A stretch of 64,000 nt of DNA from assembly GCA_002269645.1 (NCBI GenBank), contig NIVC01000639.1, forward strand, positions 166,972-230,971, read 5' to 3'. Source of the stretch: Macrostomum lignano (taxonomy: Eukaryota). Shown piece by piece: positions 2,947 to 20,552 of the stretch. A program made the translations under genes and the position numbers. The stretch's first letter is position 1, and every line of letters begins with the position of its first letter. Under the pieces are notes generated by a model that was not told the DNA's origin, ran no database searches, and saw only the letters and a program-made list of their open reading frames with translations.

Positions 2947-5900
2947 TCAGGCGTCAGGCTCAAGGTAGGCACCGTCGTCATGCTCCACCAGTGCGCGCTG
3001 CTGATCCAGGAAGCGGCAATACGCCGCAACATTAGTCGGCCGGCGGACCGAGATCACGAGGTTCGGGTGCACGGGGTTCGCTATGTACGCATTGACCCTG
3101 CGCCTGGCGTAGTCAACGGGGATGGCAGCACCGAAGGTGGTCATCTCCACTTCTTTGTCACTGAAAACTCCGCGACTGGCGGCTGCGATGTACTTGGACG
3201 GGCAGGCGAGGCAGTCATTCATGGTGCCGACCATGTCGCGGAAGCTCGGCCGAGACTCCGGATGCGGCAGCCAGCAGCTCAGCAGGATGTTGTAGAAGTC
3301 GATGCTGCAGATGTCGGGCTGGTTCAGTCGGATGCCCTTCTTCAGCAGGCCGGTGATGTCCTCCACCGAGCGGATCCCGTACGGGTTGTAGGGCGACTCG
3401 CCGAACGTGCAGATCTCCCACAGCAGCACGCCGTAGCTCCACACGTCCGACTTGTGGCTGAACAGTCCGGACTCAAAGCACTCCACGCCGAGCCACTTCA
3501 CCGGCAGCAGGCCGGCCGTCTGGATGAACTCGCCCTCCGACATGTCCAGCAGACGGGCCAGCCCGAAGTCCGTGATCCTCACCTGGTCCGGAGTCTGCAG
3601 CAGCACGTTGCGGGCAGCCAGGTCGCGGTGTACAATGCCCAGAGACTCCAGGTACTCCATGCCCTCTGCCACTTGTAGACCCCAGCGCAGCATTCGCTCC
3701 GCACCGATCTGGTTGCGGTGCGCTCGCAGGAACTCCAGCAGACAGCCCCGAGGCATCAGCGCCGTGATCAGCTGCGGCTCCTGGGTCAGGCACAGAGCCA
3801 CCAGTCGGATACAGCATGGATGCTGCACTCTGGCCAGCATGCTCGCTTCGTTCAGCAGCTCTTGGCCCAGCTTCGGACTGTGGCCGCGCAGCACCTTGAT
3901 CGCGACGGGCAGCTCGCGAACTCCCTTGTTCGTGCTCGACCGCAGGATGCCCTTGTACACCGTGCCGAACGCGCCACTGCCAACCTCCTTCTGCTTCATC
4001 ACATCGTCGTCATTCACAATCAGCAGCTTCGCCATGGCGTTCGGGTTGCTCGGGTCCGTCAGGTACTCGTCCAAGTCGACGATTTCGTACTTTCGCATGC
4101 GCCTCCGGTAGTGCACGTAGGCCACCGGCAGCAGCACCAGCAGCACCAGAATGAGCAGCCCGACGCCAATGCCGACGGTGAGGAGTCTCGCAGACGCCAC
4201 CGAGTAGCAGCGGCCCTTCGAGTCGGCGCGCATCTCTCGGCTGCTACAGGCGGCCACGCACTTGCCGTCCTCCTCCAGGTTGCTGCAGCGCTCGCACTCG
4301 GAGGCGCTCGGACTGCTGCAGCCACCCTCGCACTCGCTGTGGCACTCCTGACATTCTCCGCTCAGATTGTACCGACCGGCCTCCTGGCACGTGGCGTAGC
4401 AGCGGCCGTCCACCTCGAAGTTCCGGCAGGCTACGCACATGTCGGGTCCGGGTCCCCAGCACTCGTCGCGGCACTGGGGGTCACAGACGGCGTTCCTGCA
4501 CACCTCGCTCGTGTTGTCGAAGCTGCGCTCCTTATCTGTTTCGCTTGGCCAGTGCTCCTTCAAGTCTTGCAGCTTCGCCGCGAAGTTGAACGGAAACCAG
4601 CGAGCGCAGAGACCTCTGACATTTCTCAGGCCGAAACAGGACACGTATTTCAGAGACGCAAAGCCAAAATGAGTAATTCTGCAGTCATCAACAAATAGGT
4701 GCCCTGAAACTTGCACGAGATTTTTAAGAAAGCTAAGGCTTCCTATGTGCTGTGGAATATTTTTTATTACAAATTTTTCGACCAAAATAGCTCGAACGGA
4801 TTTCAGATTCCAAATTCCAGAATCTGCATCCAGCGGTCCCAATCGCAGTTGATTTCCATCGATGCTTAAAACTTTTTTAAACTTCAACTCTGTCGGTGCC
4901 AGTGTCGAACAGTTGCTAAACTTTCCTAGAAATTCCTCAGTAAGGGTTCTCTGAAAGCCGTCTTTGCACACGTGGCAGCCCTGTCGCACTCCGGCCACTG
5001 AGCAGGGAGTGCAGATTCCGCTGATGGGCATTTGACCATCAGGACATTCGACAATGCAGTACTTGTGATTGGAATCAATCACGAAGTCTCTCGGGCACTG
5101 GTCAACGCAAACGTTTCCTGCCTGCATCAGAGAATCCTGCGCCGTGTTGATTCGGCTGTATGCCGCATCATACGAATTATTGCGGCAGCTATGGGCGCAC
5201 CTGCCGGCCAGAAGCACACTGCGGCACGCGCGACACTCGCTTGGTTGAAATGACCGGCACCCTCCGAGACAGCTGTTGTCGCAGCATTCTTCCTCGCCGG
5301 TGGGCCGAGTATAGCAGGAGTGGCAGCTTCGCTTCCTGCACTTGGACACCATCTGGCACTCCGTGCTTGACCAGCACAATCGGTGGCCTTCCTTGCTCAT
5401 GGGACAGTCGTCAGGGCACTCGGGGAGATGAGAACAGATGTTAGCCTGATCAGCCGGTTTGAGCGAACTGTTGGTCATGTTATTCAAGTGAGTCACTGCA
5501 TCGAGCAGATGCTGTTCTTTGTGCTCGAATACTTCACTCCAGCTAATTTTTCGGGTTAGCTGGCAATAGAGGTGGATGTCCATGCTGGTGGAGAACATTA
5601 CACCGGGTCCTTGGATGGAGACGAGCTTTGGCATGAATATCTGAGTCGGCGTGTTGCAGTATCCGATCTCCAAGGCGTATAAAGGGTGAGAGGGGCTTTG
5701 CGAGTAGATGAAGCCTCTGATGGCTCTGAGGTTCCGCAGCTCGAGTCGCTTGATGCCGAGGCCCGTGATAACAACTCTACCGGATACCTCTCTAATGGAA
5801 TCAAGAAAGCTAGTATTCATTTCATAGATGTTGCGGTCGATTGTGACTCCGGTGAAGTGCGACCCCAGAAAATGGACGTGCAAATCTCCGTTTACGAATT

Positions 5901-6087
5901 GACAGCCGTCCACCTTGCGGGAGAGAATTTCATGCAGATAGCTCACATTCTTTAGCTGTTTGTAGTCGCTGTTCGTGATGCGGAGGCTCCGGCAGATTTT
6001 CGGCTCCGGAACTATGGCCGAGTGGCCGGGCTTCGGCACCCGGAACGCCATCAGCCACAGTAGGACAAGGACCGCGTCGCTTCGCAT
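2947..6087 (-). CDS. EGFR: EGFR/ErbB-family receptor tyrosine kinase, copy A (single exon)
   Basis: Uninterrupted ORF; the likely start is ATG 6087 (MRSDAVLVLLWLMAF, signal-peptide-like) rather than the track's TTG 6132. It has an L1 domain (DGCQFVNGDL...LRNLRAIRG), furin-like Cys-rich domains, L2, a TM helix (LLTVGIGVGLLILVLLVLLPVAYV), and a kinase with GSGAFG, VAIK, HRDLAARN, DFG and SDVWSYGV. Confidence 0.95.
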   Translation of the reverse strand: MRSDAVLVLLWLMAFRVPKPGHSAIVPEPKICRSLRITNSDYKQLKNVSYLHEILSRKVDGCQFVNGDLHVHFLGSHFTGVTIDRNIYEMNTSFLDSIREVSGRVVITGLGIKRLELRNLRAIRGFIYSQSPSHPLYALEIGYCNTPTQIFMPKLVSIQGPGVMFSTSMDIHLYCQLTRKISWSEVFEHKEQHLLDAVTHLNNMTNSSLKPADQANICSHLPECPDDCPMSKEGHRLCWSSTECQMVSKCRKRSCHSCYTRPTGEEECCDNSCLGGCRSFQPSECRACRSVLLAGRCAHSCRNNSYDAAYSRINTAQDSLMQAGNVCVDQCPRDFVIDSNHKYCIVECPDGQMPISGICTPCSVAGVRQGCHVCKDGFQRTLTEEFLGKFSNCSTLAPTELKFKKVLSIDGNQLRLGPLDADSGIWNLKSVRAILVEKFVIKNIPQHIGSLSFLKNLVQVSGHLFVDDCRITHFGFASLKYVSCFGLRNVRGLCARWFPFNFAAKLQDLKEHWPSETDKERSFDNTSEVCRNAVCDPQCRDECWGPGPDMCVACRNFEVDGRCYATCQEAGRYNLSGECQECHSECEGGCSSPSASECERCSNLEEDGKCVAACSSREMRADSKGRCYSVASARLLTVGIGVGLLILVLLVLLPVAYVHYRRRMRKYEIVDLDEYLTDPSNPNAMAKLLIVNDDDVMKQKEVGSGAFGTVYKGILRSSTNKGVRELPVAIKVLRGHSPKLGQELLNEASMLARVQHPCCIRLVALCLTQEPQLITALMPRGCLLEFLRAHRNQIGAERMLRWGLQVAEGMEYLESLGIVHRDLAARNVLLQTPDQVRITDFGLARLLDMSEGEFIQTAGLLPVKWLGVECFESGLFSHKSDVWSYGVLLWEICTFGESPYNPYGIRSVEDITGLLKKGIRLNQPDICSIDFYNILLSCWLPHPESRPSFRDMVGTMNDCLACPSKYIAAASRGVFSDKEVEMTTFGAAIPVDYARRRVNAYIANPVHPNLVISVRRPTNVAAYCRFLDQQRALVEHDDGAYLEPDA

Positions 6088-7289
6088 CTCTTGCGAGTGG
6101 TGCTTAGGGTCTTTTATCTGAAATTGAAGCAATTTTTAGGGCTTCAAAATCTAAATCTCATGTTAAAAACTGGCCAATGCAAATTGCGGAGACCCTCTTG
6201 CTACACAAGACGTGAAGTTCCCCCTTTTTAATTTGCTTTGAGGGTCGAACCGTTTGAGTTTGGCTAGCAGCTACTTATTAACTAGCCACGAAGACTTGTC
6301 AGCTTACCGCAAATTGCTTTGAGGCGCAGTATGAGAAGCGAAATTTCGTGCAACCTGTGCAGCGGGGGCAGCAGCAGCAGCCAAGAGATGCAATCCAGCT
6401 TTTATGCCCTGAGTCCATTAAGCTCACCCACGCCCCGGCCTCTCCAACCCAGGCACAAGTGCAAGAGAAGCAGCCAATCTGACGGTAGTTGCCAGCTGTC
6501 TACACGGTTGCACCCGCGAATTTTCCAAAAGAAAGGCACAGTTGGGTGTCCGTCCGTATTGTCAGGAAACAAGTGACAATGATTTACAAGCCGCCATGCT
6601 GAATATAATCCGTTGTTTACTGCTCTTTGTGTCTGTCGAATCCGCCTGATTCAGTGTGCATTGTTTAATGGCAATTAATTTTTGCGGCAACAAGTCTTTG
6701 ATCTCGCCGAAGTGGGAGCGGCGATCCGAATGAGGATCTGAGGAGAATTCAAGAGTCACGTGAAACCCGTTTACTAGAGGGAACAGCTATTGGGTGCCTT
6801 CTAGAAACAAGTGATCTGAGCAGCTCTGAGCAGCCCAGATCAGGCTTTGTCACCGATTCAGCAGAGAACGTTTTGAGCCGATGAAGTGGAGACAAAAGGG
6901 TATAACTAAGTGGCCGTTTAGCAGACTAATCCAGCGCATTTATTTGATGCAGCGCACTCGGCATTCGGTGCATTGTCTGACTACTTCGATTAGTTGCGAA
7001 GTGGCACTCTTGATGGCTCAATGAACGTTCGAAGAGAAGATTTTAGCGGGAGCAGGTCAACGCCCCCTCACAGCATGCAGCACCAGGACGGTGCAGCCCA
7101 CGTTTTAAAGGTCTGTAGAGAGATCCAAACCAAGAGAACTGAACTCACCTGCAAGACTTGTGATTAACGATATGCCTTTTCAATTTTTGCAGTAGAAATT
7201 TAGAAGCGGCCCACGCTACCGCGGATAAAAACAAGTAACTCACTGCAAGGCTCCAGACACTCCGTCACTGGCCACTAATTTTGAAAAAT

Positions 7290-7545
7290 ATTGTCTTTTG
7301 CGTGACTGCACAAAAACAGGGATTACTTGGTGTAGCCCGACTGTAAGCCCAGTAGGAAATGAACCATCTGCAAATCTACGCAGACAACCCATTCATGATC
7401 ATGGTAGGCTACGAACGTACATACGAGCGTACTTGAACGCATCAAATTGTTCCTTTAGTGTTGTCGAATGGGCTGGAGGTATTGATGGATAAACATTGCC
7501 GTTGTGTAGCAGTACACATTTCTAAGAGCACTTGCTGGGGTCAAT
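7290..7545 (-). mobile_element. Degenerate Chapaev(CMC)-type transposase fragment
   Basis: Manual minus-strand translation gives IDPSKCS*KCVLLHNGNVYPSIPPAHSTTLKEQF, then after a frameshift HEWVVCVDLQMVHFLLGLQSGYTK*SLFLC. These match Chapaev motifs as I recall them (SLKCVLLHNGN; CVDLKMVNFLLGQQSGYTKYPCFLC). Contains stops and a frameshift. Confidence 0.7.
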
Positions 7546-7599
7546 GCGTCGACCCAAAGTAGCCTAGGGACAGGGAGACGCAGATACAGCTCTGCTGCA

Positions 7600-7900
7600 G
7601 CATCGGTCCTATCAGCGCTCCAAAACTTCCACAGACTTGTTGGTACGCCGATGTGTAGTAGAGGGTCCTCCCTCACAGCGAAGTCCCGCGGATCCGCCTT
7701 AATAGACACCCCTGCAGCGCGATGACATCACAGCTTAGGTTGAGCGCTAGCTTTGCCAGAGCCCCTCTCCGCCCAGGCGGCCCCGAGAGTGCGGCAGTTC
7801 AGCGTCCCGACCCGAAGTATGAGCAGTTGAGTCTCACGGAAGATCCGCATGGGCCAGCGCAGCCGCAGTTCGGCGGACAGCACCACGTCGCCGACCGCGC
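7600..7900 (-). mobile_element. Degenerate non-LTR retrotransposon (RTE-like) APE endonuclease N-terminal fragment
   Basis: Minus-strand LRVGTLNCRTL followed, in another frame, by AKLALNLSCDVIALQ; these are the GTxN and DIIxLQE motifs of LINE endonucleases. Frameshifted. Confidence 0.6.
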
Positions 7901-8709
7901 CAATTTCACTTCACGTCGGAGCTCAACACGCCGACGTTCGCTCCGCTGCTCTTGCTTAGTCCTGCCGCTGTTGGCCGCCGCAGCAGTGAAGCGCAGTCGA
8001 CCGTCTTGACCACTTGGAGGTCGCAGAATTTACTTTATCAACGTGCAAATAATACAGGACTCCCCTCTCCATAAGTTTGACTCAAGCCCCGATGCCAGGC
8101 ATCATTTGTCACTTAGTGAGCCATTTTGCACTGCGTCTGCAGATGCTCAGTGTAAGCTACAAAACCTTCCTTTGCTTGACTTCAACTGGCCAAAACGAGT
8201 CCAACACACTAGCAATGCAAAGTGCACTGAAGGCCAAGCTTTTGTTAGAGAGGAAGAAACAAACAATATCGCGTTACACTGACGCAGCTTTCCCAACTTT
8301 GCTGTAATTTTAGCTCGCTAATGATTTAAGATGCACAAGAAACCTCAGCAAACTTCATGCTTGCAGCTTTGAATATTAGGCTCGCTACTTACAACAGTAT
8401 ACGCGGGTCTGTGTGCTAGATAATTATCACGCCTATGCCAATGTGTTAGTCGATAAGTCAAATATGGATAAACAAAAATTTAGATAGATTTCGATCTGTT
8501 TGTGAAGCTGCTGATGATGACATTTAGACACAAAAAATTGCAAAACCCATTCGACTGAGAGATGCATGCTGCAGTTCGAGATATCTGGGCTTTTAGCCCG
8601 GCTGCTTTTCACACCGCAACAACCACTCCAGTGGACTACTGGGAGTAACGGGGTTACAACGGTAACCACCAACTATCTGTTGCCTATTAGTCTTTCAAGT
8701 CACTGATTA

Positions 8710-9020
8710 AACCACCAACCACCAACCAGTCCCGGGATCCCACACCAACCAGCCCCGGGATTCCCCACCAACCAGTCCCAAGATCCTGAACCAACCAGTC
8801 CCGAGAGCCGAGATCCCGCACCAACCAGTCCCAAGATCCTGAACGAACCAGTCCCGAGAGCCGAGATCCCGCACCAACCAGTCCCAAGATCCTGAACCAA
8901 CCAGTCCCGAGATCCCCCACCCACCAGGTCCCGGGATCCCACAACAACCAGTCTCGAGATCCTGCACCAACCAGTCCCGGGATCCCCCACCCACCAGTCC
9001 CGAGATCTCGCACCAACCAG
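8710..9020. repeat. Degenerate ~23-bp minisatellite
   Basis: Repeated ACCAACCAGTCCCGAGATCC-like units. Confidence 0.85.
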
Positions 9021-9399
9021 TGAGGGGACACTATGCATCCAACGCCGCAACAGTTGCAGCACATCGTGTGGCAAGTCAGCGTTAGAGTTTCAAGTGAAAA
9101 CTCGTATTTCAATCCAATGCAGTCCGGAGGGCAGAGTTAATGAATTCACGGGCATGAGCCGGCGCAAAACATAATGCAGGATCATTTCATTCTTCACGAT
9201 AAATTTAACCAAGCCTAACAGCTGCGCAAATTGTGACTGACATTTGCAATATCTGAGGCCATGTGGATGAGCACTGGACACTCAAACAGAAATGAAATTG
9301 CAATAAACCTGTGAGCAGTCAGGCTGCAAGCTTGAGTTCGAAACATGCATAATACGGTTGGGTTTTAAAATGTTTAAAACTGTTTTTACGGTTAGGCCA

Positions 9400-9782
9400 T
9401 CGGGGTCACGGAAGGCCATGGGGTCATGGGGGTCAGGGGAGTCATGAAGGTCAGTGGGGTCATGGGGGTCATAGGGGTCATGGAGGTCAGGGGGATTAGG
9501 GGGTCAGGGCTCTAGGGGGTCAGTGCGTTAGGGGGTCCGGGCGTTAGGGGTCAGGGGGTCATGGGTGTCATAGTTGTCATGGGGATCAGGGGTCTGGGGT
9601 CATGGGGGTCATGGAGGTCAGGGGGATCAGGGGGTCAGGATTTCAGGGTGTCAGGGTGTCAGGGTCAGGGGTCATGGGGGTCATGGGCGTCATAGGGGTC
9701 ATGGAGGTCACGGGGTCAGGGTGTCAGGGGTTAGGGGGTCATGGGGTCAGGGGGTCATGGGGTCAGGGGTCAGGGGGTCATG
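9400..9782. repeat. Degenerate G-rich GGGGTCA(T/G) short-unit array
   Basis: Dozens of GGGGTCA units. Confidence 0.85.
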
Positions 9783-10359
9783 ACACCTCAAACGGCCGAC
9801 CATTAAAATTTGTCTACTGCACCTGATTGGCGGCTCGGACACGCTAAGCGGTTGAGCCGTTTTTTTCTAAAATTAAAAAAATAGCTCTGGGGTGATTAAA
9901 TTTTGCAAAATTTCCTCCTGCGAAATGTCGCGATTAGGCCGCCGTGTTTGCTTTCGAAGTTGCCGCGCGCTTCCCTCTTGGCCCCAGATTTCCGCGCAAA
10001 TATTTTCCCCATCTTTAATTTACTCACTCTGCAGAGTTCCCTTCACAAAAAGTTTGCAGAAATCCAAGCCAGCTCTGTGCAGTTTGAGTTGCCGTACTCA
10101 ATCTGGCACTTTTATTGCTGCGGCACGAGAGGCAATAAAAGCCAGTGAAAAACGCTGGGCTGCGCAAGCAGGCAGCGGCTGCACTAATCGCGTCCTGCAC
10201 TCAGCGAGTTCGTCTGTTCGTCTGGATGAAATAACAGATTTTGCCGTGAAGCCGCTGATAAATGCAGGCTGCGCGAAATCCGACTGCGCTGCTGGATGAA
10301 CTGCCTCTTCCAGTCCTCTGCGCTTCGTGTCCGCCCTCTGCCGCTTCTTAGCGGACTCT

Positions 10360-10665
10360 ACTTTTCCCTCTACCACTCCACTTTTCCCTCTAGCACTCTA
10401 CGTTTTTCTCTACCCGCTCTACTTTTCCTTCTAGCGCTCTACGTTTTTCTCTACCCGCTCTACTTTTCCCTTTACCGCTCTACTTTTCCCTCTACCGCTC
10501 TACTCCTACCTCTAACGCTCTACTTTTCTTTCTAGCACTCTACTCTTTTCTCTACCCGCTCTACTTTTCTCTCCACCGCTCTGCTTTTCTTTCTAGCACT
10601 CTACTTTTCTCTCTACCGCTCTACTCTTCTCTCAATAGCGCTACTCTTCCCTCTACCGCTGGACT
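10360..10665. repeat. Pyrimidine-rich degenerate array (CTCTACTTTTCCCTCTACCG-like)
   Basis: Repeated CTCTAC...TTTTC units. Confidence 0.85.
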
Positions 10666-10700
10666 TTCCTATCAACCAAATGATTATTTGATCCAACGAT

Positions 10701-11553
<853 letters not shown>

Positions 11554-11841
11554 TAGATTTGTCTTTTCACTCAGCGCCAGCGCCACTTCCTGATGCTAAT
11601 GAGAGCAGAAGGCTCTGGCACTCTGATGCCGCTGTCATTAGAAATGCATCATCCAAGCACGCGGTGACTACGCGAAAATTTTAATCAACTGCTAATTGGT
11701 GTGACGCAGGACAACTGATGCATTGCCTGTTGCATTAAGCATACTTAGCTCGGATATGCGCTGTTCTATCTGAGAGGGCGTCGCTTTTACAAACTAGAAA
11801 TGCCCGTTATTTTCACAAGCTCAAATTTATGACAGCTAGTA

Positions 11842-13585
11842 GAGTGAGTGTCAGACTGTCAGGATCGCTAGAGTGGGTGTCAGACTGTCAGGATCGCTAG
11901 AGTGGGTGTCAGACTGTCAGGATCGTTAGAGTGGGTGTCAGACTGTCAGGATCGCTAGAGTGGGTGTCAGACTGTCAGGATCGCTGGAGTGGGTGTCAGA
12001 CTGTCAGGATCGCTAGAGTGAGTGTCAGACTGTCAGGATCGCTGGAGTGGGTGTCAGACTGTCAAGATCGCTAGAGTGGGTGTCAGACTGTCAAGATCGC
12101 TAGAGTGGGTGTCAGACTGTCAGGATCGCTAGAGTGGGTGTCAGACTGTCAGGATCGCTAGAGTGGGTGTCAGACTGTCAAGATCGCTAGAGTGGGTGTC
12201 AGACTGTCAAGATCGCTAGAGTGGGTGTCAGACTGTCAAGATCGCTAGAGTGGGTGTCAGACTGTCAAGGATCGCTAGAGTGGGTGTCAGACTGTCAGGA
12301 TCGCTAGAGTGGGTGTCAGACTGTCAAGATCGCTAGAGTGGGTGTCAGACTGTCAAGATCGCTAGAGTGGGTGTCAGACTGTCAAGATCGCTAGAGTGGG
12401 TGTCAGACTGTCAAGGATCGCTAGAGTGGGTGTCAGACTGTCAAGATCGCTAGAGTGGGTGTCAGACTGTCAAGATCGCTAGAGTGGGTGTCAGACTGTC
12501 AAGATCGCTAGAGTGGGTGTCAGACTGTCAGGCCTGCTAGAGTGGGTGTCAGACTGTCAGGATCGCTAGAGTGGGTGTCAGACTGTCAGGATCGCTAGAG
12601 TGGGTGTCAGACTGTCAGGATCGCTAGAGTGGGTGTCAGACTGTCAGGATCGCTAGAGTGGGTGTCAGACTGTCAGGCCTGCTAGAGTGGGTGTCAGACT
12701 GTCAGGATCGCTAGAGTGGGTGTCAGACTGTCAGGATCGCTAGAGTGGGTGTCAGACTGTCAGGATCGCTAGAGTGGGTGTCAGACTGTCAGGCCTGCTA
12801 GAGTGGGTGTCAGACTGTCAGGCCTGCTAGAGTGGGTGTCAGACTGTCAGGATCGCTAGAGTGGGTGTCAGACTGTCAGGCTTGCTAGAGTGGGTGTCAG
12901 ACTGTCAGGCTTGCTAGAGTGGGTGTCAGACTGTCAGGATCGCTAGAGTGGGTGTCAGACTGTCAGGATTGCTAGAGTGGGTGTCAGACTGTCAGGGGAC
13001 CAATAGAGTGGTTGTCAGACTGTCAGGATCGCTAGAGTGGGTGTCAGACTGTCAATGATCGCTAGAGTGGGTGTCAGACTGTCAGGATCGCTAGAGTGGG
13101 TGTCAGACTGTCAGGATCGCTAGAGTGGGTGTCAGACTGTCAAGGATCGCTAGAGTGGGTGTCAGACTGTCAAGGATCGCTAGAGTGGGTGTCAGACTGT
13201 CAAGGATCGCTAGAGTGGGTGTCAGACTGTCAGGATCGCTAGATGAGTGTCAGACTGTCAGGATCGCTATAGTGGGTGTCAGACTGTCAGGGGACCAATA
13301 GAGTGGGTGTCAGACTGTCAGGATCGCTAGAGTGGGTGTCAGACTGTCAGGATCGCTAGAGTGAGTTTCAGACTGTCAGGATCGCTAGAGTGAGTGTCAG
13401 ACTGTCAGGATCGCTAGAGTGGGTGTCAGACTGTCAAGGATCGCTAGAGTGGGTGTCAGACTGTCAAGGATCGCTAGAGTGGGTGTCAGACTGTCAAGGA
13501 TCGCTAGAGTGGGTGTCAGACTGTCAGGATCGCTAGAGTGGGTGTCAGATTGTCAGACTTGCTACATGGGGTGTCAGACTGTCAG
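11842..13585. repeat. 29-bp minisatellite, array 1
   Basis: Unit AGAGTGGGTGTCAGACTGTCAGGATCGCT with variants. Confidence 0.97.
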
Positions 13586-14054
13586 GACCGCTCTTGGTGT
13601 AGAAAGCACACGGTATACTTTTGCCTGTTTCTGGTCTCCAATAGCAGATTAATTTCAGTTCGTTTTGAAGCGACATTGGGGATGAATTCCAGCAAATCCC
13701 GTATAAAACTTCCGGATAAAGCAGCACGAAAAAAGTTTAAGTGCAAGATATTATAGCCATCCTGTTGCTAGGGGGTCTACGAGAAGTTCTGAACCCGGAC
13801 GAACTGCACTTGGGATTTGCCAGCCTGCGCCCCCTCCCCCCAGTCTAAGAAGACGACGTCTTTCTGATTGTACAGCTTACCAACAAACTATTCGCTGCTT
13901 TATCAAGGATGCAGAAAAACTGAAAAATGTCAGCAGTTCGGTACATCCTACCTTGTCTCGTGGAATTAAAGCTTTTAGTTGTAGAGGTCTGTCTAAGTGA
14001 GTGACTGCATGTTCTCGATCTTCGCTTGCTACACTGGTTAGCATTAGAGCTGAC

Positions 14055-15850
14055 GGGTTTCAGACTGTCAGGATCGCTAGAGTGGTTGTCAGACTGTCAG
14101 GCTTGCTTGGGGGTCAGACTGTCAGGATCGCTAGAGTGGTTGTCAGACTGTCAGGCTTGCTTGGGGGTCAGACTGTCAGGATCGCTAGAGTGGTTGTCAG
14201 ACTGTCAGGCTTGCTTGGGGGTCAGACTGTCAGGATCGCTAGAGTGGTTGTCAGACTGTCAGGCTTGCTTGGGTGTCAGACTGTCAGGATCGCTAGAGTG
14301 GTTGTCAGACTGTCAGGCTTGCTTGGGTGTCAGACTGTCAGGATCGCTAAAGTGGGTGTCAGACTGTCAGGCTTGCTTGGGTGTCAGACTGTCAGGATCG
14401 CTAGAGTGGGTGTCAGACTGTCAGGCTTGCTAGAGTGGGTGTCAGACTGTCAGGATCGATATAGTGGGTGTCAGACTGTCAGGATCGCTAGAGTGGGTTT
14501 CAGACTGTCAGGATTGCTAGAGTGGGTGTCAGACTGTCAGGATCGATAGAGTGGGTGTCAGACTGTCAGGATCGATAGAGTGGGTGTCAGACTCTCAGGA
14601 TCGCTAGAGTGGTTGTCAGACTGTCAGGCTTGCTTGGGTGTCAGACTGTCAGGATCGCTAGAGTGGGTTTCAGACTGTCAGGATTGCTAGAGTGGGTGTC
14701 AGACTGTCAGGCTTGCTAGAGTGGGTGTCAGACTGTCAGGATCGATAGAGTGGGTGTCAGACTGTCAGGATCGCTAGAGTGGGTGTCAGACTGTCAGGAT
14801 CGCTAGAGTGGGTGTCAGACTGTCAGGATCGCTAGAGTGGGTGTCAGACTGTCAAGGATCGCTAGAGTGGGTGTCAGACTGTCAAGGATCGCTAGAGTGG
14901 GTGTCAGACTGTCAGGATCGCTAGATGAGTGTCAGACTGTCAGGATCGCTAGAGTGGGTGTCAGACTGTCAAGGATCGCTAGAGTGGGTGTCAGACTGTC
15001 AGGATCGCTAGAGTGAGTGTCAGACTGTCAGGATCGCTAGAGTGAGTGTCAGACTGTCAGGATCGCTAGATGAGTGTCAGACTGTCAGGATCGCTATAGT
15101 GGGTGTCAGACTGTCAGGATCGCTAGAGTGGGTGTCAGACTGTCAGGATCGCTAGATGAGTGTCAGACTGTCAGGATCGCTAGAGTGGGTGTCAGACTGT
15201 CAAGGATCGCTAGAGTGGGTGTCAGACTGTCAAGGATCGCTAGAGTGGGTGTCAGACTGTCAGGATCGCTAGATGAGTGTCAGACTGTCAGGATCACTAG
15301 AGTGGGTGTCAGACTGTCAAGGATCGCTATAGTGGGTGTCAGACTGTCAGGATCGCTAGAGTGAGTGTCAGACTGTCAGGATCGCTAGAGTGAGTGTCAG
15401 ACTGTCAGGATCGCTAGATGAGTGTCAGACTGTCAGGATCGCTATAGTGGGTGTCAGACTGTCAGGATCGCTAGAGTGGGTGTCAGACTGTCAGGATCGC
15501 TAGATGAGTGTCAGACTGTCAGGATCGCTAGAGTGGGTGTCAGACTGTCAGGATCGCTAGAGTGAGTGTCAGACTGTCAGGATCGCTAGATGAGTGTCAG
15601 ACTGTCAGGATAGCTAGAGTGGGTGTCAGACTGTCAGGATCGCTAGAGTGGGTGTTAGACTGTCAGGATCGCTAGAGTGGGTGTCAGACTGTCAGGATCG
15701 CTAGAGTGGGTGTCAGACTGTCAGGATCGCTAGAGTGAGTGTCAGACTGTCAGGATCGCTAGATGAGTGTCAGACTGTCAGGATCGCTAGAGTGGGTGTC
15801 AGACTGTCAGGATCGCTTGCTTGGGTGTCAGACTGTCAGGATCGCTAGAG
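14055..15850. repeat. 29-bp minisatellite, array 2 (same family; local alternating higher-order variant near 14070-14350)
   Basis: Same unit as 11842-13585, separated from it by about 470 bp of non-repetitive DNA. Confidence 0.97.
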
Positions 15851-15964
15851 TTTCCAAAATTCTCGAGTGACGGTCAGAACAGTGCCACGACAACGCTTTT
15901 CCAGGAAGCGCTATGAACACAATTTACCAGCACAAGGAAAGCTCGGGAGCGCAACAACCCTGAA

Positions 15965-16578
15965 TAGGGAATACAATCCCGGGATTTTGGTTAGGCCTAA
16001 ATCCCGGGATCACAATTGTCCGGTATTCGAAAATCCCGGGATTGACCATCGGGATCCTGATCCTGCTTTGCAATGATCTCGAGTATCTGCAGCTGAGATA
16101 CTTGTCAGGTGAAAATCATAACTCAGTTGTCCTACCTTGATTTCTTAATCGTTTTAAGCATGCAGGGTAGCGAGTAGAAGGCTATAGGGCTGCAGGGACA
16201 CGAAACAGAAGCTGTTAGCAGGTCGTAAGGGTATTTAAGGTGTACTAATGTAGAACTACTTTAAGCAGTCCCTACCTTCAAAACTCCTTGGCCGTAGTTG
16301 GGATTAGAACAGTGGGGACCTTGCTATCGGACCACAACCCAAGCTACCAGTTCTCCATCTAGGGCGGGTGCCCCTGGGAGGGTGAGGTCTGATCCCCTTC
16401 TGCCCTGGTATCAGTGCCTCGGGCCATAGCTCTGTAAGCTATCATTCTTCAGGTTACATCACAATCAAGTGTGATTTTCCTGAGCTGATACTGGCATGTA
16501 AAAAAGCACCTTTACAGCACCTTTACAGAAATCCCGACAATCCCGAGATTGGCAAAACTCGGGATTTTGTATTCCCTA
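15965..16578. mobile_element. Non-autonomous hAT-type MITE (614 bp)
   Basis: TIRs TAGGGAATACAATCCCG / CGGGATTTTGTATTCCCTA; subterminal (AT)CCCGGGAT repeats; exact 8-bp TSD ACCCTGAA at 15957-15964 and 16579-16586. Confidence 0.88.
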
Positions 16579-17279
16579 ACCCTGAACATTTAAGTGGTTT
16601 GCCATGATGCCATGCCATTGCCATCGGTTTGTCACAACCCACCAATATTTTCAGTCAGTTTCATTTTATTAATTGGACCAGTGCCCAATCCGAGTCAAAT
16701 GTACAGTGCGCACGGAATGCACACTCCTTGTACACTCACTCACTCTGTGCGCTTGAGGCCTCAGCTTAGGAGTGGGGCTGGGGGGTGCTTGCGATAAGTC
16801 AGCTCGCAGTCAATTGGGTGACGGGGCACAGCGGGGGGGGTCTGCATTTGAAAGGCTGTGCAGTCGCCCGGCCCCATTTTACTGATAAGCGAATGGAGGC
16901 CTGATATGGCATAAAGCGTTGTAGCGATCTCGCAGTGCTTTATATAGCCTGGCTGGCAAACTGCGTGGGCCGCACGAGGAGAAAAACGCAACAAACAGGT
17001 AAACCGACCAAGCTGCCAAGAGAAGCCTTCGATTTGGCAGCTCACCTGCAATCAACTACGCTTTAGTATTGTTTGTTTGTTAAAAACCTTCGCAAAAGAC
17101 TGCCTTATTGGGGCATTTCCCGCAACTGCGCGAGCCTGATAAGATAAAGGCCGATTCAATTCACTTTCAAAAAAGACAGGCTCAGCGAGCGGAAAGGCGA
17201 GGCAAAACGAGTAATTAACAGCTGAAAAATACTGCAGAATTTCCTGGCAGCCTGCGCGAAACAGTTGACGCTGGGAAAC

Positions 17280-20200
17280 ATGACTCTAAGGCTCCGGCTG
17301 CTCACTCTGCAGCTGCTGCTGCTGGCCGCATCAGCTTCAGCCAGCCAGCCGCTGGGCTCCAGCAGCCGCCTGTGCAAGACGGTCTACATCTCAAGTCGCG
17401 AGTACCGCACCCACAGGAACATCAGCCGGCTGCATGCTGAGCTCCAGGCCAGCGTGGACGGCTGCCAGTACGTTCACGGCGACGTAATCATCCAGAACAT
17501 CGGCGCCGACTCCGTCACTGAGGAGCCGATTGACGAGGCCATCCGCGGCCTCCAAACCGACTTCCTGGACTCCATCATCGAGATCAGCGGCCGATTGGTG
17601 ATCAAACGGATTAACCTGGAGCGCATCAGCTTGCGCAACTTGCGCGCCATCCGCGGCTACAACCTGGAGAACACCAGCCCCTTCTTCGCAATGGAGGTTT
17701 TCCAATCGAAGTACCCGGTCAAGCTAGAGCTGCCGCAGCTGAGCGCCATCCTGCAAGGCGACGTCCGCATCATCGGCAACCTGCACGCCGACCTTTACTG
17801 CTACCTGTCCCGCCGGATTAATTGGCCCAGCCTCTTCCAGAGCCACTCGAGCCGAACGCCGCAGCAGTTCAACGACAACGTGGAGATCATGACGCTGGGC
17901 GACCAGCAGATCAACGTCAGCGACTACGCCGCAACCGAGAAGGTCTGCACGTCGCTTCCAGCGTGCAACTCCAGCTGCCACACGGAGAAGTCCGGGCGGC
18001 AGCTCTGCTGGTCCGACAGTCCCGGGGGCTGCCAGAGCTTCCACGGGTGTCTCGTGCGCCCATGTCGGAACTGCTTCCGCCATCCGTACACAGGCAACGA
18101 GGAGTGCTGCGAAAGCGACTGTCTTGGCGGTTGCTCGAACAAATCGGACGGCTGCTTTTCCTGCCGCGATGTCAGCCTGGACGGCGTCTGCAAAGGCAAC
18201 TGCCCGATGAAGACCGATCTGAACCCCGGCACCAACAAGATCGAGACGCGGAACTCCAGTACAACTATGAAGCGAGTGGGCAACATCTGCGTGAAACAGT
18301 GCGAGATGCCCTTCGTCACCAGCTCCAACGACAAGTACTGCGTGAGCGAGTGCCCTCTGACCGAGATTCCCGTCAATGGCATCTGCACGCGCTGCGCGGC
18401 CAAGCACCAGTCTGCCTGCGAGACGTGCACCGTCGACACGCTAATCATGAGCGACAAAGTGGCGCAGGCTTTGAAGAACGGCAACTGCACGATTTGGCGG
18501 ACCGACTCGTCGCTGGATATCAACTCGGAGAAGCTCAACAGCAGTGCCAGCCTCGAGACGCTGGAGTTTCTGCGAATTTTCTATGGCCGACTGTTCATCA
18601 AGCGGACGGATCGGCTGGTGGACAATCTGCGGTTCCTTCGCAATCTTAAATTTGTTTCGAACAACTTTGGCATCATGATGCTGCACACGCGGTACCTGGG
18701 CCTCGCCAGCCTGCGATACGCCAAAGCTCTCTGGCTCATCAAGATCAGCGGGCTCTGCGAAGCTTGGTACCCTAGCAGAAGAATTCGACAGATTACAGAG
18801 GTCACGAAAGAATTTACCATAGGCACCCGTGAAATCAGCTTCGACAACACGAGCGAGGTGTGCAGGAACGCCGTCTGTGACCCCCAGTGCCGCGACGAGT
18901 GCTGGGGACCCGGATCCGACATGTGCGTAGCCTGCCGGAACTTCGAGGTGGACGGCCGCTGCTACGCCACGTGCCAGGATTCCGGTCGGTACAATCTGAG
19001 CGGAGAATGTCAGGAGTGCCACAGCGAGTGCGAGGGCGGCTGCAGCAGTCCGAGCGCCTCCGAGTGCGAGCGCTGCAGCAACCTGGAGGAGGACGGCAAG
19101 TGCGTGGCCGCCTGCAGCAGCCGAGAGATGCGCGCCGACTCGAAGGGCCGCTGCTACTCGGTGGCGTCTGCGAGACTCCTCACCGTCGGCATTGGCGTCG
19201 GGCTGCTCATTCTGGTGCTGCTGGTGCTGCTGCCGGTGGCCTACGTGCACTACCGGAGGCGCATGCGAAAGTACGAAATCGTCGACTTGGACGAGTACCT
19301 GACGGACCCGAGCAACCCGAACGCCATGGCGAAGCTGCTGATTGTGAATGACGACGATGTGATGAAGCAGAAGGAGATTGGCAGTGGCGCGTTCGGCACG
19401 GTGTACAAGGGCATCCTGCGGTCGAGCACGAACAAGGGAGTTCGCGAGCTGCCCGTCGCGATCAAGGTGCTGCGCGGCCACAGTCCGAAGCTGGGCCAAG
19501 AGCTGCTGAACGAAGCGAGCATGCTGGCCAGAGTGCAGCATCCATGCTGTATCCGACTGGTGGCTCTGTGCCTGACCCAGGAGCCGCAGCTGATCACGGC
19601 GCTGATGCCTCGGGGCTGTCTGCTGGAGTTCCTGCGAGCGCACCGCAACCAGATCGGTGCGGAGCGAATGCTGCGCTGGGGTCTACAAGTGGCAGAGGGC
19701 ATGGAGTACCTGGAGTCTCTGGGCATTGTACACCGCGACCTGGCTGCCCGCAACGTGCTGCTGCAGACTCCGGACCAGGTGAGGATCACGGACTTCGGGC
19801 TGGCCCGTCTGCTGGACATGTCGGAGGGCGAGTTCATCCAGACGGCCGGCCTGCTGCCGGTGAAGTGGCTCGGCGTGGAGTGCTTTGAGTCCGGACTGTT
19901 CAGCCACAAGTCGGACGTGTGGAGCTACGGCGTGCTGTTGTGGGAGATCTGCACGTTCGGTGAGTCGCCCTACAACCCGTACGGGATCCGCTCGGTGGAG
20001 GACATCACCGGCCTGCTGAAGAAGGGCATCCGACTGAACCAGCCCGACATCTGCAGCATCGACTTCTACAACATCCTGCTGAGCTGCTGGCTGCCGCATC
20101 CGGAGTCTCGGCCGAGCTTCCGCGACATGGTCGGCACCATGAATGACTGCCTCGCCTGCCCGTCCAAGTACATCGCACAGCGGTACAGCACCATGGACCC

Positions 20201-20552
20201 GAACCTGTTCGACACCGATGATGCTGTCGGGTTTGTGACCGAAGTGTCAAAGCCGGCCGCACCGCAGCCGTTGCAGAAAAGCCCGGACAAGCACGGCGTG
20301 GAGCTGAACTCGTACATCTCCGACCCGACCTCCTGCTCGGCATCGAAACTGCGTAACTCGCCGGCACGGGCGCTGCAAGCTCAGGCCAGCAACACCAGCG
20401 AGAGCGCCGGCCTGCTGAGCGGCCAGATGAGCGTGCCCGACGCAAACGACGACTACCTGACGCCGACGTCGCCGGGAGATAACTACGGAGACGTGCACGA
20501 CGGTGGCGGAGCATGCGGCCTGGACGACTACCTGACGCCGAGGAAGGCGTGA
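17280..20552 (+). CDS. EGFR: EGFR/ErbB-family receptor tyrosine kinase, copy B (single exon)
   Basis: Uninterrupted ORF; likely start ATG 17280 (MTLRLRLLTLQLLLLAASASA, signal peptide). L1-CR1-L2-CR2-TM-kinase with the same catalytic motifs as copy A, and a Tyr-containing tail (YSTM, DDYLTP twice). Confidence 0.95.
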   Translation: MTLRLRLLTLQLLLLAASASASQPLGSSSRLCKTVYISSREYRTHRNISRLHAELQASVDGCQYVHGDVIIQNIGADSVTEEPIDEAIRGLQTDFLDSIIEISGRLVIKRINLERISLRNLRAIRGYNLENTSPFFAMEVFQSKYPVKLELPQLSAILQGDVRIIGNLHADLYCYLSRRINWPSLFQSHSSRTPQQFNDNVEIMTLGDQQINVSDYAATEKVCTSLPACNSSCHTEKSGRQLCWSDSPGGCQSFHGCLVRPCRNCFRHPYTGNEECCESDCLGGCSNKSDGCFSCRDVSLDGVCKGNCPMKTDLNPGTNKIETRNSSTTMKRVGNICVKQCEMPFVTSSNDKYCVSECPLTEIPVNGICTRCAAKHQSACETCTVDTLIMSDKVAQALKNGNCTIWRTDSSLDINSEKLNSSASLETLEFLRIFYGRLFIKRTDRLVDNLRFLRNLKFVSNNFGIMMLHTRYLGLASLRYAKALWLIKISGLCEAWYPSRRIRQITEVTKEFTIGTREISFDNTSEVCRNAVCDPQCRDECWGPGSDMCVACRNFEVDGRCYATCQDSGRYNLSGECQECHSECEGGCSSPSASECERCSNLEEDGKCVAACSSREMRADSKGRCYSVASARLLTVGIGVGLLILVLLVLLPVAYVHYRRRMRKYEIVDLDEYLTDPSNPNAMAKLLIVNDDDVMKQKEIGSGAFGTVYKGILRSSTNKGVRELPVAIKVLRGHSPKLGQELLNEASMLARVQHPCCIRLVALCLTQEPQLITALMPRGCLLEFLRAHRNQIGAERMLRWGLQVAEGMEYLESLGIVHRDLAARNVLLQTPDQVRITDFGLARLLDMSEGEFIQTAGLLPVKWLGVECFESGLFSHKSDVWSYGVLLWEICTFGESPYNPYGIRSVEDITGLLKKGIRLNQPDICSIDFYNILLSCWLPHPESRPSFRDMVGTMNDCLACPSKYIAQRYSTMDPNLFDTDDAVGFVTEVSKPAAPQPLQKSPDKHGVELNSYISDPTSCSASKLRNSPARALQAQASNTSESAGLLSGQMSVPDANDDYLTPTSPGDNYGDVHDGGGACGLDDYLTPRKA

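What the first reader, a model, noticed from the sequence alone, without database searches (positions are those of the whole stretch)
3184..20177. Two EGFRs share a near-identical 1,342-bp inverted block bounded by protein-domain edges
Seen: 4525->3184 (minus) and 18836->20177 (plus) are both 1,342 bp. They differ by only about 8 substitutions I could spot (4 amino acids: P/S, E/D, A/S, V/I), several near the 5' end of the block. The block starts at the L2/CR2 junction (SFDNTSEVC) and stops at the kinase end (SKYIA). On either side the paralogs are heavily diverged: L1 is only roughly half identical by eye, and L2 and the tails much less. Inference: recent or recurrent gene conversion, or module replacement, keeps the signalling core uniform while ligand-binding and docking modules diversify.
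Basis: partly seen in the sequence, partly recalled or inferred. Interest (0 to 1): 0.82.

Follow-up and report, generated by a model that had tools for sequence, protein, structure and literature searches.

The report
Gene conversion between two flatworm EGFRs
Two neighbouring, oppositely oriented EGF-receptor genes of the flatworm Macrostomum lignano are very different proteins except for a 1,342-base stretch (membrane-proximal domain, membrane anchor and kinase) that one gene has almost certainly copied from the other: a real and clean case of an already well-known process, gene conversion between paralogs.

Summary
The arms 3184-4525(-) and 18836-20177(+) are 1,342 nt with 8 substitutions, no indels and razor-sharp edges. 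dS is 0.013 inside the block and about 2 (saturated) outside.

The window is Macrostomum lignano Mlig_3_7, contig NIVC01000639.1. Both genes are intact, intronless EGFR/ErbB-family receptors lying head-to-head. Gene A is unannotated.

A and B are not sister paralogs. Their ectodomains are 33% identical and never group together in bootstraps, whereas the block groups them in 100%. Both block edges sit on the outermost short nucleotide islands conserved across the family (16 nt and 21 nt), so the junctions were homology-guided. They are not at introns.

Third-codon-position G+C content (GC3) jumps at the block in A (0.33-0.74 to 0.80-0.95) but not in B, which suggests B was the donor and A the recipient.

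The A-B block divergence (0.6%) equals that among the three neopolyploid subgenome copies of B (0.5-1.0%). A lies within B-copy diversity, so the exchange dates to about the genome duplication or later and may be repeated.

The junctions recur on three contigs and in a gene model from an older assembly. A gross assembly artefact is therefore unlikely, but SNP-level patterns are not secure.

Verdict: real ectopic gene conversion, a new example of a known kind, of moderate interest.

The parts
2947..6087 (-). Gene A: intact, intronless EGFR/ErbB-family receptor CDS (1046 aa plus stop; the open frame extends up to 6132). Not annotated in any public protein set.
   Evidence: ORF list and translation. 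Pfam finds Recep_L, Furin-like, GF_recep_IV and PK_Tyr. No exact product is on record. No A-type ectodomain was found in the protein databases. All 28 of 28 family-conserved ectodomain cysteines are retained.
3184..4525 (-). Block arm in gene A: domain IV (CR2), transmembrane helix, juxtamembrane segment and tyrosine-kinase domain. Inferred to be the recipient copy.
   Evidence: GC3 jumps from 0.33-0.74 in the A-specific part to 0.80-0.95 in the block.
4526..6087 (-). A-specific ectodomain (signal peptide, L1, CR1, L2). It is 33% identical to B, and synonymous sites are saturated.
2947..3183 (-). A-specific C-terminal tail (78 aa plus stop), 22-24% identical to the tail of B.
   Evidence: The first tail codons resemble paralog P0019 (GCCGCCAG after KYIA).
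17280..20552 (+). Gene B: intronless EGFR/ErbB-family receptor CDS (1090 aa, = P0001), annotated in Mlig_3_7.
18836..20177 (+). Block arm in gene B. Inferred to be the donor-type copy; its composition is continuous with the rest of B.
18835..18850 (+). 5' edge island TCAGCTTCGACAACAC (the SFDNT motif). It ties for the longest exact match between B and paralog P0002 in the 5' half of the gene, and it starts at the block edge.
20156..20176 (+). 3' edge island CTGCCCGTCCAAGTACATCGC (the CPSKYIA motif). It is the last exact-match island (21 nt) between B and paralog P0019, and it ends at the block edge. The same island in A lies at 3185-3205(-).
4526..18835 (.). Spacer of 14,310 nt between the arms. 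It holds both 5' gene halves head-to-head, the intergenic region, and 23-bp, 20-bp, (GATA)n and 29-bp (4 kb) tandem arrays. It has no other inverted symmetry apart from a 73-nt pair.
   Evidence: It is collinear with a second subgenome copy, L004, where it is about 1 kb shorter (the output for the third copy, L005, was cut and is not assessed).

Best explanation
This is a real ectopic (non-allelic) gene conversion between two physically linked, head-to-head EGFR-family paralogs of Macrostomum lignano.

A homology-guided repair event copied 1,342 bp from gene B into the homologous position of gene A. The copied piece encodes domain IV, the transmembrane and juxtamembrane segments and the kinase, and it overwrote A's own version. 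More than one such event is possible.

The tract ends where usable nucleotide homology between the two subfamilies ends. These are a 16-nt island at the L2/domain IV junction and a 21-nt island at the end of the kinase. That is why the edges look like domain edges.

The inverted orientation, 14.3 kb apart, lets the two arms pair within one chromatid, so exchange can happen without deleting anything.

The last homogenisation is about as old as, or younger than, the divergence of the three subgenomes of this neopolyploid.

What is shown: the tract, its sharpness, the dS step, the tree incongruence, the coincidence of edges with islands, and the reproducibility of the junctions.

What is inferred: the B-to-A direction, the repair mechanism, repeated exchange, and any functional benefit.
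For: - **Tract and edges:** 1342 nt, 8 substitutions, no indels, flanks unalignable.
- **dS step:** 0.013 in the block against about 2.0 in the ectodomain and about 2.5 in the tail. Nucleotide identity is 99.4% against 48% and 39%.
- **Tree incongruence:** in neighbour-joining (NJ) trees with 500 bootstraps, A+B group at 100% in the block. In the ectodomain that grouping is absent from the ten most frequent groupings, the least frequent of which had 4.4% support. There A groups with P0003/P0019 (78%) and B with P0002 (61%).
- **Edges at conserved islands:** TCAGCTTCGACAACAC starts at the 5' edge and CTGCCCGTCCAAGTACATCGC ends at the 3' edge. Each is the outermost exact-match island shared with other paralogs.
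- **Direction:** GC3 along A runs 0.74, 0.65, 0.62, 0.71, 0.57, 0.33, then 0.80-0.95 in the block, then 0.75. GC3 along B is smooth at 0.74-0.94.
- **Timing:** block differences are A-B 8, A-B1 7, A-B2 11, B-B1 9, B-B2 14 and B1-B2 10. Only 2 sites are private to A. B against B1 outside the block is 14 in 1931 nt. Genome-wide divergence of coding sequence between subgenomes is 1.1% (PMC10733133).
- **Reproducibility:** the B junctions are identical on contigs NIVC01000639.1, NIVC01001626.1 and NIVC01000386.1. An old gene model, P0011, contains the antisense translation of a second A copy, with the A-specific tail and the A-specific L2 end flanking the block.
- **Kinase intact:** the motifs GSGAFG, VAIK, HRDLAARN and DFG are all present.
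Against: - **No independent read evidence:** both assemblies use the same PacBio reads of the inbred DV1 line. Mlig_3_7 was also Pilon-polished with multi-mapping Illumina and RNA-seq reads (PMC5730564). The exact number and pattern of SNPs among the near-identical blocks may therefore be distorted.
- **Direction rests mainly on composition:** the block kinase is as similar to P0019 (79%) as to P0002 (78.5%). The NJ support for block+P0002 is only 64%.
- **Weak homology before conversion:** if A was P0019-like, pre-conversion nucleotide identity would have been far below what canonical homologous recombination needs. Domain IV would have been about 48-50% identical at the protein level. The first event must then have been anchored on short islands, or the region was never allowed to diverge.
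- **Thin evidence for repeated exchange:** it rests on 3 informative sites (202, 212, 715) plus inferences from an antisense translation.
- **No cross-species data:** no orthologous loci from other species could be examined.
Confidence: 0.8

Rival explanations
1. Continuous concerted evolution since an ancient inverted duplication. On this view A and B have always been neighbours, the block has been homogenised without interruption, and only the outer modules were free to diverge.
For: - There are no fixed A-type versus B-type differences at the sites that can be read. Polymorphisms are shared between A-type and B-type blocks: sites 202, 212, 715 and 1198. Sites 202 and 715 show all four gametes.
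- At least two subgenomes carry an A copy with the block.
- A block tree of ((A,B),P0002) fits this scenario too.
Against: - A is not B's sister in the ectodomain, and B is closer to P0002 (45% against 33%).
- GC3 steps sharply at the block in A only, which is not expected if the block had sat in A's context for as long as the flanks.
- The edges fall from 100% identity straight to background with no zone of intermediate divergence.
- The P0002, P0003 and P0019 loci have no inverted partner within 10 kb.
Confidence: 0.12
2. Replicative template switching (a FoSTeS/MMBIR-type event) rather than recombinational repair. A stalled fork in A would have switched to the inverted B copy and back, using microhomology, and so pasted in the block.
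For: - Both junctions lie in short identity islands of 16 and 21 nt.
- The paralogs are otherwise very diverged.
- The inverted orientation at 14 kb is a typical setting for template switches (established knowledge).
Against: - The replacement is perfectly homologous and in frame at both ends. There are no inserted or deleted bases and no extra copy of the segment. This is what conversion gives, and it is unusual for MMBIR.
- The sequence alone cannot separate the two mechanisms.
Confidence: 0.1
3. Assembly or polishing artefact. On this view the block in A, or in B, is a consensus contaminated by reads from the other copy, and the true copies are much more divergent.
For: - The genome is a highly repetitive three-subgenome neopolyploid in which 93% of read pairs multi-map (PMC10733133).
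- Pilon polishing used Illumina and RNA-seq reads.
- One subgenome copy shows a likely homopolymer error inside the block.
Against: - The junctions are in frame and identical on three contigs for B, and they recur for A in a gene model from a differently assembled and polished assembly.
- The arms are not literal copies, as they differ at 8 sites.
- PacBio reads are much longer than 1.3 kb and anchor in unique flanks.
- Polishing cannot turn roughly 70% identity into 99.4% over 1.3 kb with clean edges.
Confidence: 0.04
4. Extreme purifying selection on the signalling core alone, with no exchange of sequence.
For: Kinase domains are the most conserved part of the family, at 70-79% protein identity among the other paralogs.
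Against: - Synonymous divergence in the block is 0.013, against saturation outside it.
- Domain IV and the transmembrane/juxtamembrane segments are only 46-61% identical among the other paralogs, yet 97-100% identical between A and B.
Confidence: 0.01

Closest known systems
Interlocus (ectopic) gene conversion between inverted paralogs or palindrome arms, for example the human Y-chromosome palindromes and inverted segmental duplications (own knowledge; review: Chen et al. 2007, cited in PMC6368629)
   Same: It has inverted copies a few kb apart on one chromosome, near-identity maintained by non-reciprocal exchange, and sharp identity boundaries. The inverted orientation avoids deletions.
   Different: The arms here are only 1.3 kb and lie inside two otherwise unalignable genes. 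They are not whole duplicated gene-bearing arms, and the partners are old members of different subfamilies, not a recent duplication.
Domain-restricted gene conversion in paired receptors, for example SIGLEC11/SIGLEC16 and the KIR/LILR families (own knowledge, not tested here)
   Same: Only one module of a modular receptor is homogenised between neighbouring paralogs. The result is receptors that share one module and differ in the rest.
   Different: In those cases the ligand-binding ectodomain is shared and the signalling part differs. Here the membrane-proximal and kinase core is shared, while the ectodomain and docking tail differ.
Gene conversion among tandem plant receptor-like kinases (cysteine-rich receptor-like kinases (CRKs), GENECONV analysis, PMC6368629; the rice Xa21 family recombining at a highly conserved stretch, own knowledge)
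   Same: These are receptor kinases in clusters, with exchange that depends on proximity and residual homology. Breakpoints fall at conserved stretches.
   Different: Those are plant Ser/Thr receptor-like kinases in tandem, direct orientation, and conversion is mostly between recent duplicates. That paper states that conversion becomes rare as copies diverge, whereas here the partners are strongly diverged.
Lineage-specific EGFR expansion in flatworms (Barberan et al. 2016, PMC4914847)
   Same: M. lignano was reported to have 8 EGFRs from an expansion independent of those in planarians and polyclads. A and B belong to this expansion.
   Different: That study was transcriptome-based and does not mention gene conversion (0 occurrences of the term) or intronless copies. 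It reports introns in all six planarian EGFRs, whereas A, B and P0019 here are intronless.

Membership tests
EGFR/ErbB receptor tyrosine kinase family | Ectodomain with L domain, furin-like Cys-rich domain, second L region and domain IV | tested here: met
   Pfam finds Recep_L_domain, Furin-like and GF_recep_IV in both proteins. The second L domain is too diverged for Pfam and is inferred from its position. All 28 of 28 conserved ectodomain cysteines are present in A.
EGFR/ErbB receptor tyrosine kinase family | Single transmembrane helix followed by an EGFR-type tyrosine-kinase domain with catalytic motifs | tested here: met
   PK_Tyr_Ser-Thr scores E about 1e-78. The best solved-structure matches are EGFR, ErbB2 and ErbB4 kinases. 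The motifs GSGAFG, VAIK, HRDLAARN and DFG are present. The hydrophobic stretch LLTVGIGVGLLILVLLVLLPVAYV followed by RRRMRK is visible in the translations.
EGFR/ErbB receptor tyrosine kinase family | Ligand-dependent kinase activity, and expression | not testable with these tools
   No expression or biochemical data are available here. Gene A is absent from all annotated protein sets.
Interlocus gene conversion | A tract of near-identity with abrupt boundaries inside otherwise diverged paralogs | tested here: met
Interlocus gene conversion | A drop in synonymous divergence confined to the tract | tested here: met
   dS is 0.013 in the tract against about 2.0 and 2.5 in the flanks.
Interlocus gene conversion | Phylogenetic incongruence between the tract and the flanks | tested here: met
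   A+B group at 100% in the block. In the ectodomain that grouping is absent from the ten most frequent groupings, the least frequent of which had 4.4% support.
Interlocus gene conversion | Non-reciprocal transfer with an identifiable donor and recipient | tested here: inconclusive
   The GC3 step in A only favours B-to-A transfer. Block phylogeny is not decisive: P0002 is 78.5% and P0019 79% identical in the kinase, and bootstrap support is 64%.
Interlocus gene conversion | Paralogs within a species more alike in the tract than orthologues between species | not testable with these tools
   No other Macrostomum genome or proteome is reachable. The best outside hits are other M. lignano paralogs.
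Exon shuffling / intron-mediated domain swap | Module boundaries coincide with intron positions | tested here: not met
   A and B are intronless. The nearest intron in paralog P0002 is 25 nt upstream of the 5' edge. No paralog intron lies at the 3' edge; P0002 exon 824-1084 and P0003 exon 882-1158 both span it.
Assembly artefact (collapsed or mis-polished repeat) | Junctions not reproducible in independent contigs or assemblies | tested here: not met
   The B junctions appear on three contigs. The A junctions also appear in the old gene model P0011. The raw reads themselves could not be examined.

The most novel reading that the evidence does not exclude
The 1.3-kb inverted arms may act as a standing recombination substrate rather than a one-off event. 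Crossover between them would invert the 14.3-kb spacer and re-pair each ectodomain with the other gene's docking tail. Continued conversion would keep domain IV, the transmembrane and juxtamembrane segments and the kinase identical, so that the two receptors remain fully compatible dimer partners. That would make this a selected, combinatorial two-receptor module, not a neutral accident.

Nothing here excludes this reading. The copies seen all have the same orientation, and the shared polymorphisms are compatible with ongoing exchange.
Probability: 0.07. Interest if true: 0.7.

Novelty: new member of a known kind. Interest (0 to 1): 0.38.

Why it matters
- **A natural domain swap:** the two receptors have unrelated-looking ligand-binding regions (33% identity) and different docking tails, but the same domain IV, transmembrane and juxtamembrane segments and kinase. 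The pair could be used to ask what the ectodomain and the tail each contribute to signalling in a regeneration model that can be made transgenic.
- **Conversion between very diverged paralogs:** it shows that conversion can act when only short conserved islands, 16 and 21 nt here, remain to anchor it.
- **Practical warnings for M. lignano genomics:** gene A is unannotated. Kinase-based EGFR phylogenies or paralog counts will mis-place it. Short reads, probes and RNAi triggers against the kinase region will hit both genes in all three subgenomes.
- **Limits:** the finding does not change how gene conversion is understood.

Tried and rejected
- **Viral or retrogene idea:** early on, the intronless EGFRs amid dense minisatellites suggested a virus or a recent retrocopy. 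This was dropped once the contig was identified as M. lignano and a third paralog, P0019, also proved intronless.
- **Apparent close PDB relative:** 9p9u looked like a close homologue (E = 7e-167), but it is a human EGFR construct with two kinase copies, so the score is inflated.
- **Exon-boundary explanation for the edges:** rejected.
- **Search for annotated A-type proteins:** this was meant to reach the A copies on the other two subgenome contigs. The exact look-up failed, the word-index search found nothing, and the exhaustive search found only 34-35% relatives.
- **Reaching the other A copies through flanks:** the 10-kb flanks of L004 stop at about window-equivalent 6293, roughly 200 nt short of gene A. 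The only second A copy available is therefore the antisense translation inside P0011.
- **Phylogeny to fix the donor:** inconclusive.
- **Inverted EGFR partners at other loci:** none within 10 kb of the P0002, P0003 or P0019 genes.
- **Literature:** no paper in the library links Macrostomum EGFRs with gene conversion.


Full report
**1. The observation**

The repeat finder on window 1-24000 returns one long inverted pair, 3184-4525 and 18836-20177. It is 1342 nt, 99% complementary, with 14,310 nt between the arms.

Aligning both arms with 100-nt flanks shows 8 substitutions, including one adjacent GG/TT pair, and no indels. The flanks cannot be aligned directly outside either end.

The arms lie inside two long ORFs, 2947-6132(-) and 17265-20552(+). 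With the first Met these give gene A (1046 aa) and gene B (1090 aa).

Both carry Recep_L_domain, Furin-like, GF_recep_IV and PK_Tyr_Ser-Thr. Their best solved-structure matches are EGFR, ErbB2 and ErbB4. An apparently much better hit, 9p9u, is a human EGFR construct with two kinase copies.

The block begins 12-13 residues before the Pfam domain IV match and ends 14 residues after the Pfam kinase match.

**2. Size of the step**

| Region | Aligned codons | Nucleotide identity | Protein identity | dS |
|---|---|---|---|---|
| Ectodomain | 504 | 48% | 33% | about 2.0 (pS 0.70, saturated) |
| Block | 447 | 99.4% | 99.1% | 0.013 (dN 0.004) |
| Tail | 77 | 39% | 22% | about 2.5 |

All values are from a codon alignment. 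In 30-codon windows the change from background to 98-100% identity happens within one window at each end.

At the gene-wide mismatch rate of 0.30, a 1342-nt run with 8 or fewer mismatches has a probability of about 1e-194. Purifying selection alone cannot explain this, because the synonymous sites are also identical.

**3. Where the window comes from**

The exact product of gene B is on record on contig NIVC01000639.1 of GCA_002269645.1. This is the Mlig_3_7 assembly of the flatworm Macrostomum lignano.

The closest other proteins are M. lignano EGFR paralogs P0002, P0003 and P0019, each roughly half identical to B over the whole length. Barberan et al. reported 8 EGFRs in M. lignano from a lineage-specific expansion (PMC4914847).

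Gene A is not annotated:
- No gene with its product is on record.
- A search with its ectodomain against 5.8 billion proteins found nothing.
- An exhaustive HMMER search of 1.84 billion cluster representatives found only P0019 (35%) and gene B (34%).

Even so, A keeps 28 of 28 ectodomain cysteines and 86 of 111 columns that are invariant in the four other paralogs. It also has an uninterrupted 1046-codon frame. It therefore looks like a constrained receptor gene, not a decayed copy.

**4. A and B are not a young duplicate pair**

Ectodomain identities are B-P0002 45%, B-P0003 38%, P0003-P0019 46%, and A against everything 33-35%.

In neighbour-joining (NJ) trees with 500 bootstraps, the ectodomain places A with P0003/P0019 (78%) and B with P0002 (61%). 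An A+B group is absent from the ten most frequent groupings, the least frequent of which had 4.4% support. The block gives A+B 100%.

Among the other paralogs, domain IV is 42-51% identical, the transmembrane and juxtamembrane segments 52-61%, and the kinase 70-79%. Between A and B these values are 97%, 100% and 99.6%. The tract has a different history from its flanks, which is the signature of gene conversion or replacement.

**5. The edges**

A, B and P0019 are intronless. P0002 and P0003 have introns.

The nearest paralog intron, in P0002, lies 25 nt upstream of the 5' edge. None lies at the 3' edge. Intron-mediated exon shuffling is therefore not the explanation.

Instead, both edges coincide with short islands of nucleotide identity shared across subfamilies:
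- TCAGCTTCGACAACAC (SFDNT) starts at the 5' edge. It ties for the longest exact match between B and P0002 in the 5' half of the gene.
- CTGCCCGTCCAAGTACATCGC (CPSKYIA) ends at the 3' edge. It is the last exact-match island between B and P0019.

Right after the 3' edge, A reads GCCGCCAG, as P0019 does.

The tract thus ends where homology usable for pairing ends. This also explains why the edges approximate domain borders, since conservation drops at those borders. The replacement is perfectly in register at both ends. This favours homology-guided repair (synthesis-dependent strand annealing or gap repair) over non-homologous insertion. A microhomology-guided template switch cannot be excluded from the sequence alone.

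**6. Direction**

GC3 in 80-codon windows:

| Gene | Before the block | Block | After the block |
|---|---|---|---|
| A | 0.74, 0.65, 0.62, 0.71, 0.57, 0.33 | 0.80-0.95 | 0.75 |
| B | smooth, 0.74-0.94 throughout | | |
| P0019 | 0.88-0.96 throughout | | |

The block matches B's composition and is foreign to A's. This points to B as donor and A as recipient.

Phylogeny does not settle the question. The block kinase is 78.5% identical to P0002 and 79% to P0019, and the block+P0002 grouping has only 64% bootstrap support. I rate the B-to-A direction at about 0.7.

**7. Timing and repeated exchange**

M. lignano DV1 is a neopolyploid. Its assembly holds three paralogous subgenome copies of about 70% of the genome, diverged by 1.1% in coding sequence (PMC10733133).

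Gene B has syntenic copies on NIVC01001626.1 (L004, protein P0009; called B1 here) and NIVC01000386.1 (L005, protein P0010; called B2). Both are 99.3% identical over the whole gene, and both have the same abhydrolase gene downstream.

Substitutions within the block:

| Pair | Differences |
|---|---|
| A-B | 8 |
| A-B1 | 7 |
| A-B2 | 11 |
| B-B1 | 9 |
| B-B2 | 14 |
| B1-B2 | 10 |

The A block is therefore nested within the diversity of the B copies, and only two sites (280, 542) are private to A. Three of the five differences near the 5' end (sites 80, 145 and 146) are private to the window's B copy and absent from B1 and B2. They are recent changes in B, not an edge gradient.

A 3053-aa UniParc gene model (P0011) comes from an assembly whose B gene is of the B1 type. 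It contains the antisense translation of a second A copy, complete with the A-specific tail and the A-specific L2 end on either side of the block.

Where the antisense frame is informative, that A' copy carries the B-type state at sites 202 and 280. It carries the B1/B2 state at 715 and the B2 state at 1198. The sites that can be read show no fixed A-type versus B-type difference, and sites 202 and 715 show all four gametes.

The simplest reading is that the block was already in A when the subgenomes separated, or was introduced shortly before. Some exchange between A-type and B-type blocks has happened since.

This last step is weak. It rests on a handful of sites. Both assemblies use the same PacBio reads, and Mlig_3_7 was polished with Pilon using Illumina and RNA-seq reads that multi-map among the near-identical blocks (PMC5730564; 93% of read pairs multi-map).

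**8. Artefact check**

- The B junctions are identical on three contigs.
- The A junctions recur in the model from the older assembly, made with a different assembler and polisher.
- The arms differ at 8 sites, so neither is a pasted copy of the other.
- The replacement is in frame.
- PacBio reads are far longer than 1.3 kb.

A gross artefact is unlikely; I put it at about 0.04. Polishing or read correction could have erased or shuffled a few true differences, so '99.4%' and the site patterns are approximate. I could not look at raw reads.

**9. Geometry**

The genes are head-to-head, so the two arms are the distal 3' parts. The spacer holds both ectodomain-coding halves and several minisatellites. 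It is collinear with a second subgenome copy, L004, where the 29-bp array is shorter; the output for L005 was cut.

Inverted arms can pair within one chromatid. Conversion then homogenises them without loss of sequence. A crossover would invert the spacer and re-pair each ectodomain with the other tail. No such isomer is seen in the copies available.

The P0002, P0003 and P0019 loci have no EGFR partner within 10 kb.

**10. Comparison with what is known**

Mechanistically this is ordinary ectopic gene conversion. It is known from palindrome arms, inverted duplications and clustered receptor families (own knowledge). Conversion among tandem plant receptor kinases is documented in PMC6368629.

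The closest conceptual parallel is domain-restricted conversion in paired immune receptors (own knowledge). The polarity is reversed here: the signalling core is shared, and the ligand-binding region and the docking tail differ.

The less common feature is how diverged the partners are outside the tract. No paper in the library connects Macrostomum EGFRs with gene conversion.

**11. Verdict**

Its adaptive gloss is untested, and its 'diversifying duplicates' picture should be replaced by 'old, different paralogs, one of which received the other's core'.

It is a new example of a known kind. Its value is mainly as a natural domain-swap pair, and as an annotation and phylogeny warning for this model organism. 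Interest: 0.38.

Noticed in passing
window 2947-6087 (-): Gene A is an intact 1046-aa EGFR-family gene that is missing from the Mlig_3_7 annotation and from every protein set searched. Its ectodomain has unusually low GC3 for this family: 0.33-0.74, against 0.74-0.91 in the ectodomain of B and 0.88-0.96 throughout P0019.
   Followed up: yes
L002 10001-17121, L003 10001-18547, L006 10001-13276, window genes A and B: Intron content differs sharply within one gene family. A, B and P0019 are intronless, while P0002 has at least 4 and P0003 at least 6 introns of 0.3-2 kb. The pattern does not follow the ectodomain tree, which implies repeated intron loss or gain.
   Followed up: partly
L005 about 11602 (block position 46): The third subgenome copy of gene B has a 1-nt deletion in a run of C. 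This gives the annotated truncated protein P0010 (549 aa). It is either a real pseudogenisation of one homeologue or a homopolymer error.
   Followed up: partly
window 1-2428; 11840-15851; many others to 61755: The density of minisatellites is extreme, with 41 Tandem Repeats Finder rows. Examples are a 22-bp unit repeated 110 times at the window start and a 29-bp unit repeated 139 times (4 kb) between the two EGFR genes. The 29-bp array is about 1 kb shorter in subgenome copy L004.
   Followed up: partly
window 10701-10773 / 11481-11553, with (GATA)55 at 11234-11455: A 73-nt, 99% inverted repeat brackets a 707-nt segment containing a long GATA microsatellite, in the spacer between the genes. 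It may be the ends of a small non-autonomous transposon.
   Followed up: no
window 34285-36378 (-), within the AT-rich stretch about 30000-38000: A 697-aa ORF has zf-BED and hAT dimerisation domains (a hAT transposase). It sits in a 30-34% GC island, in contrast with 45-60% GC elsewhere.
   Followed up: no
window 22163-24205 (+): A 680-aa ATG-initiated ORF just downstream of gene B has no Pfam match.
   Followed up: no
P0011 (UniParc UPI0007A2709C): This public 3053-aa 'protein' is a gene-model artefact. It strings together a transposase-like piece, the antisense translation of gene A, translated minisatellites and gene B.
   Followed up: yes
window 29235-29888 (-): An exon of a phospholipase/carboxylesterase (Abhydrolase_2) gene lies downstream of gene B. 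Its position is conserved in all three subgenome copies, which confirms synteny.
   Followed up: partly
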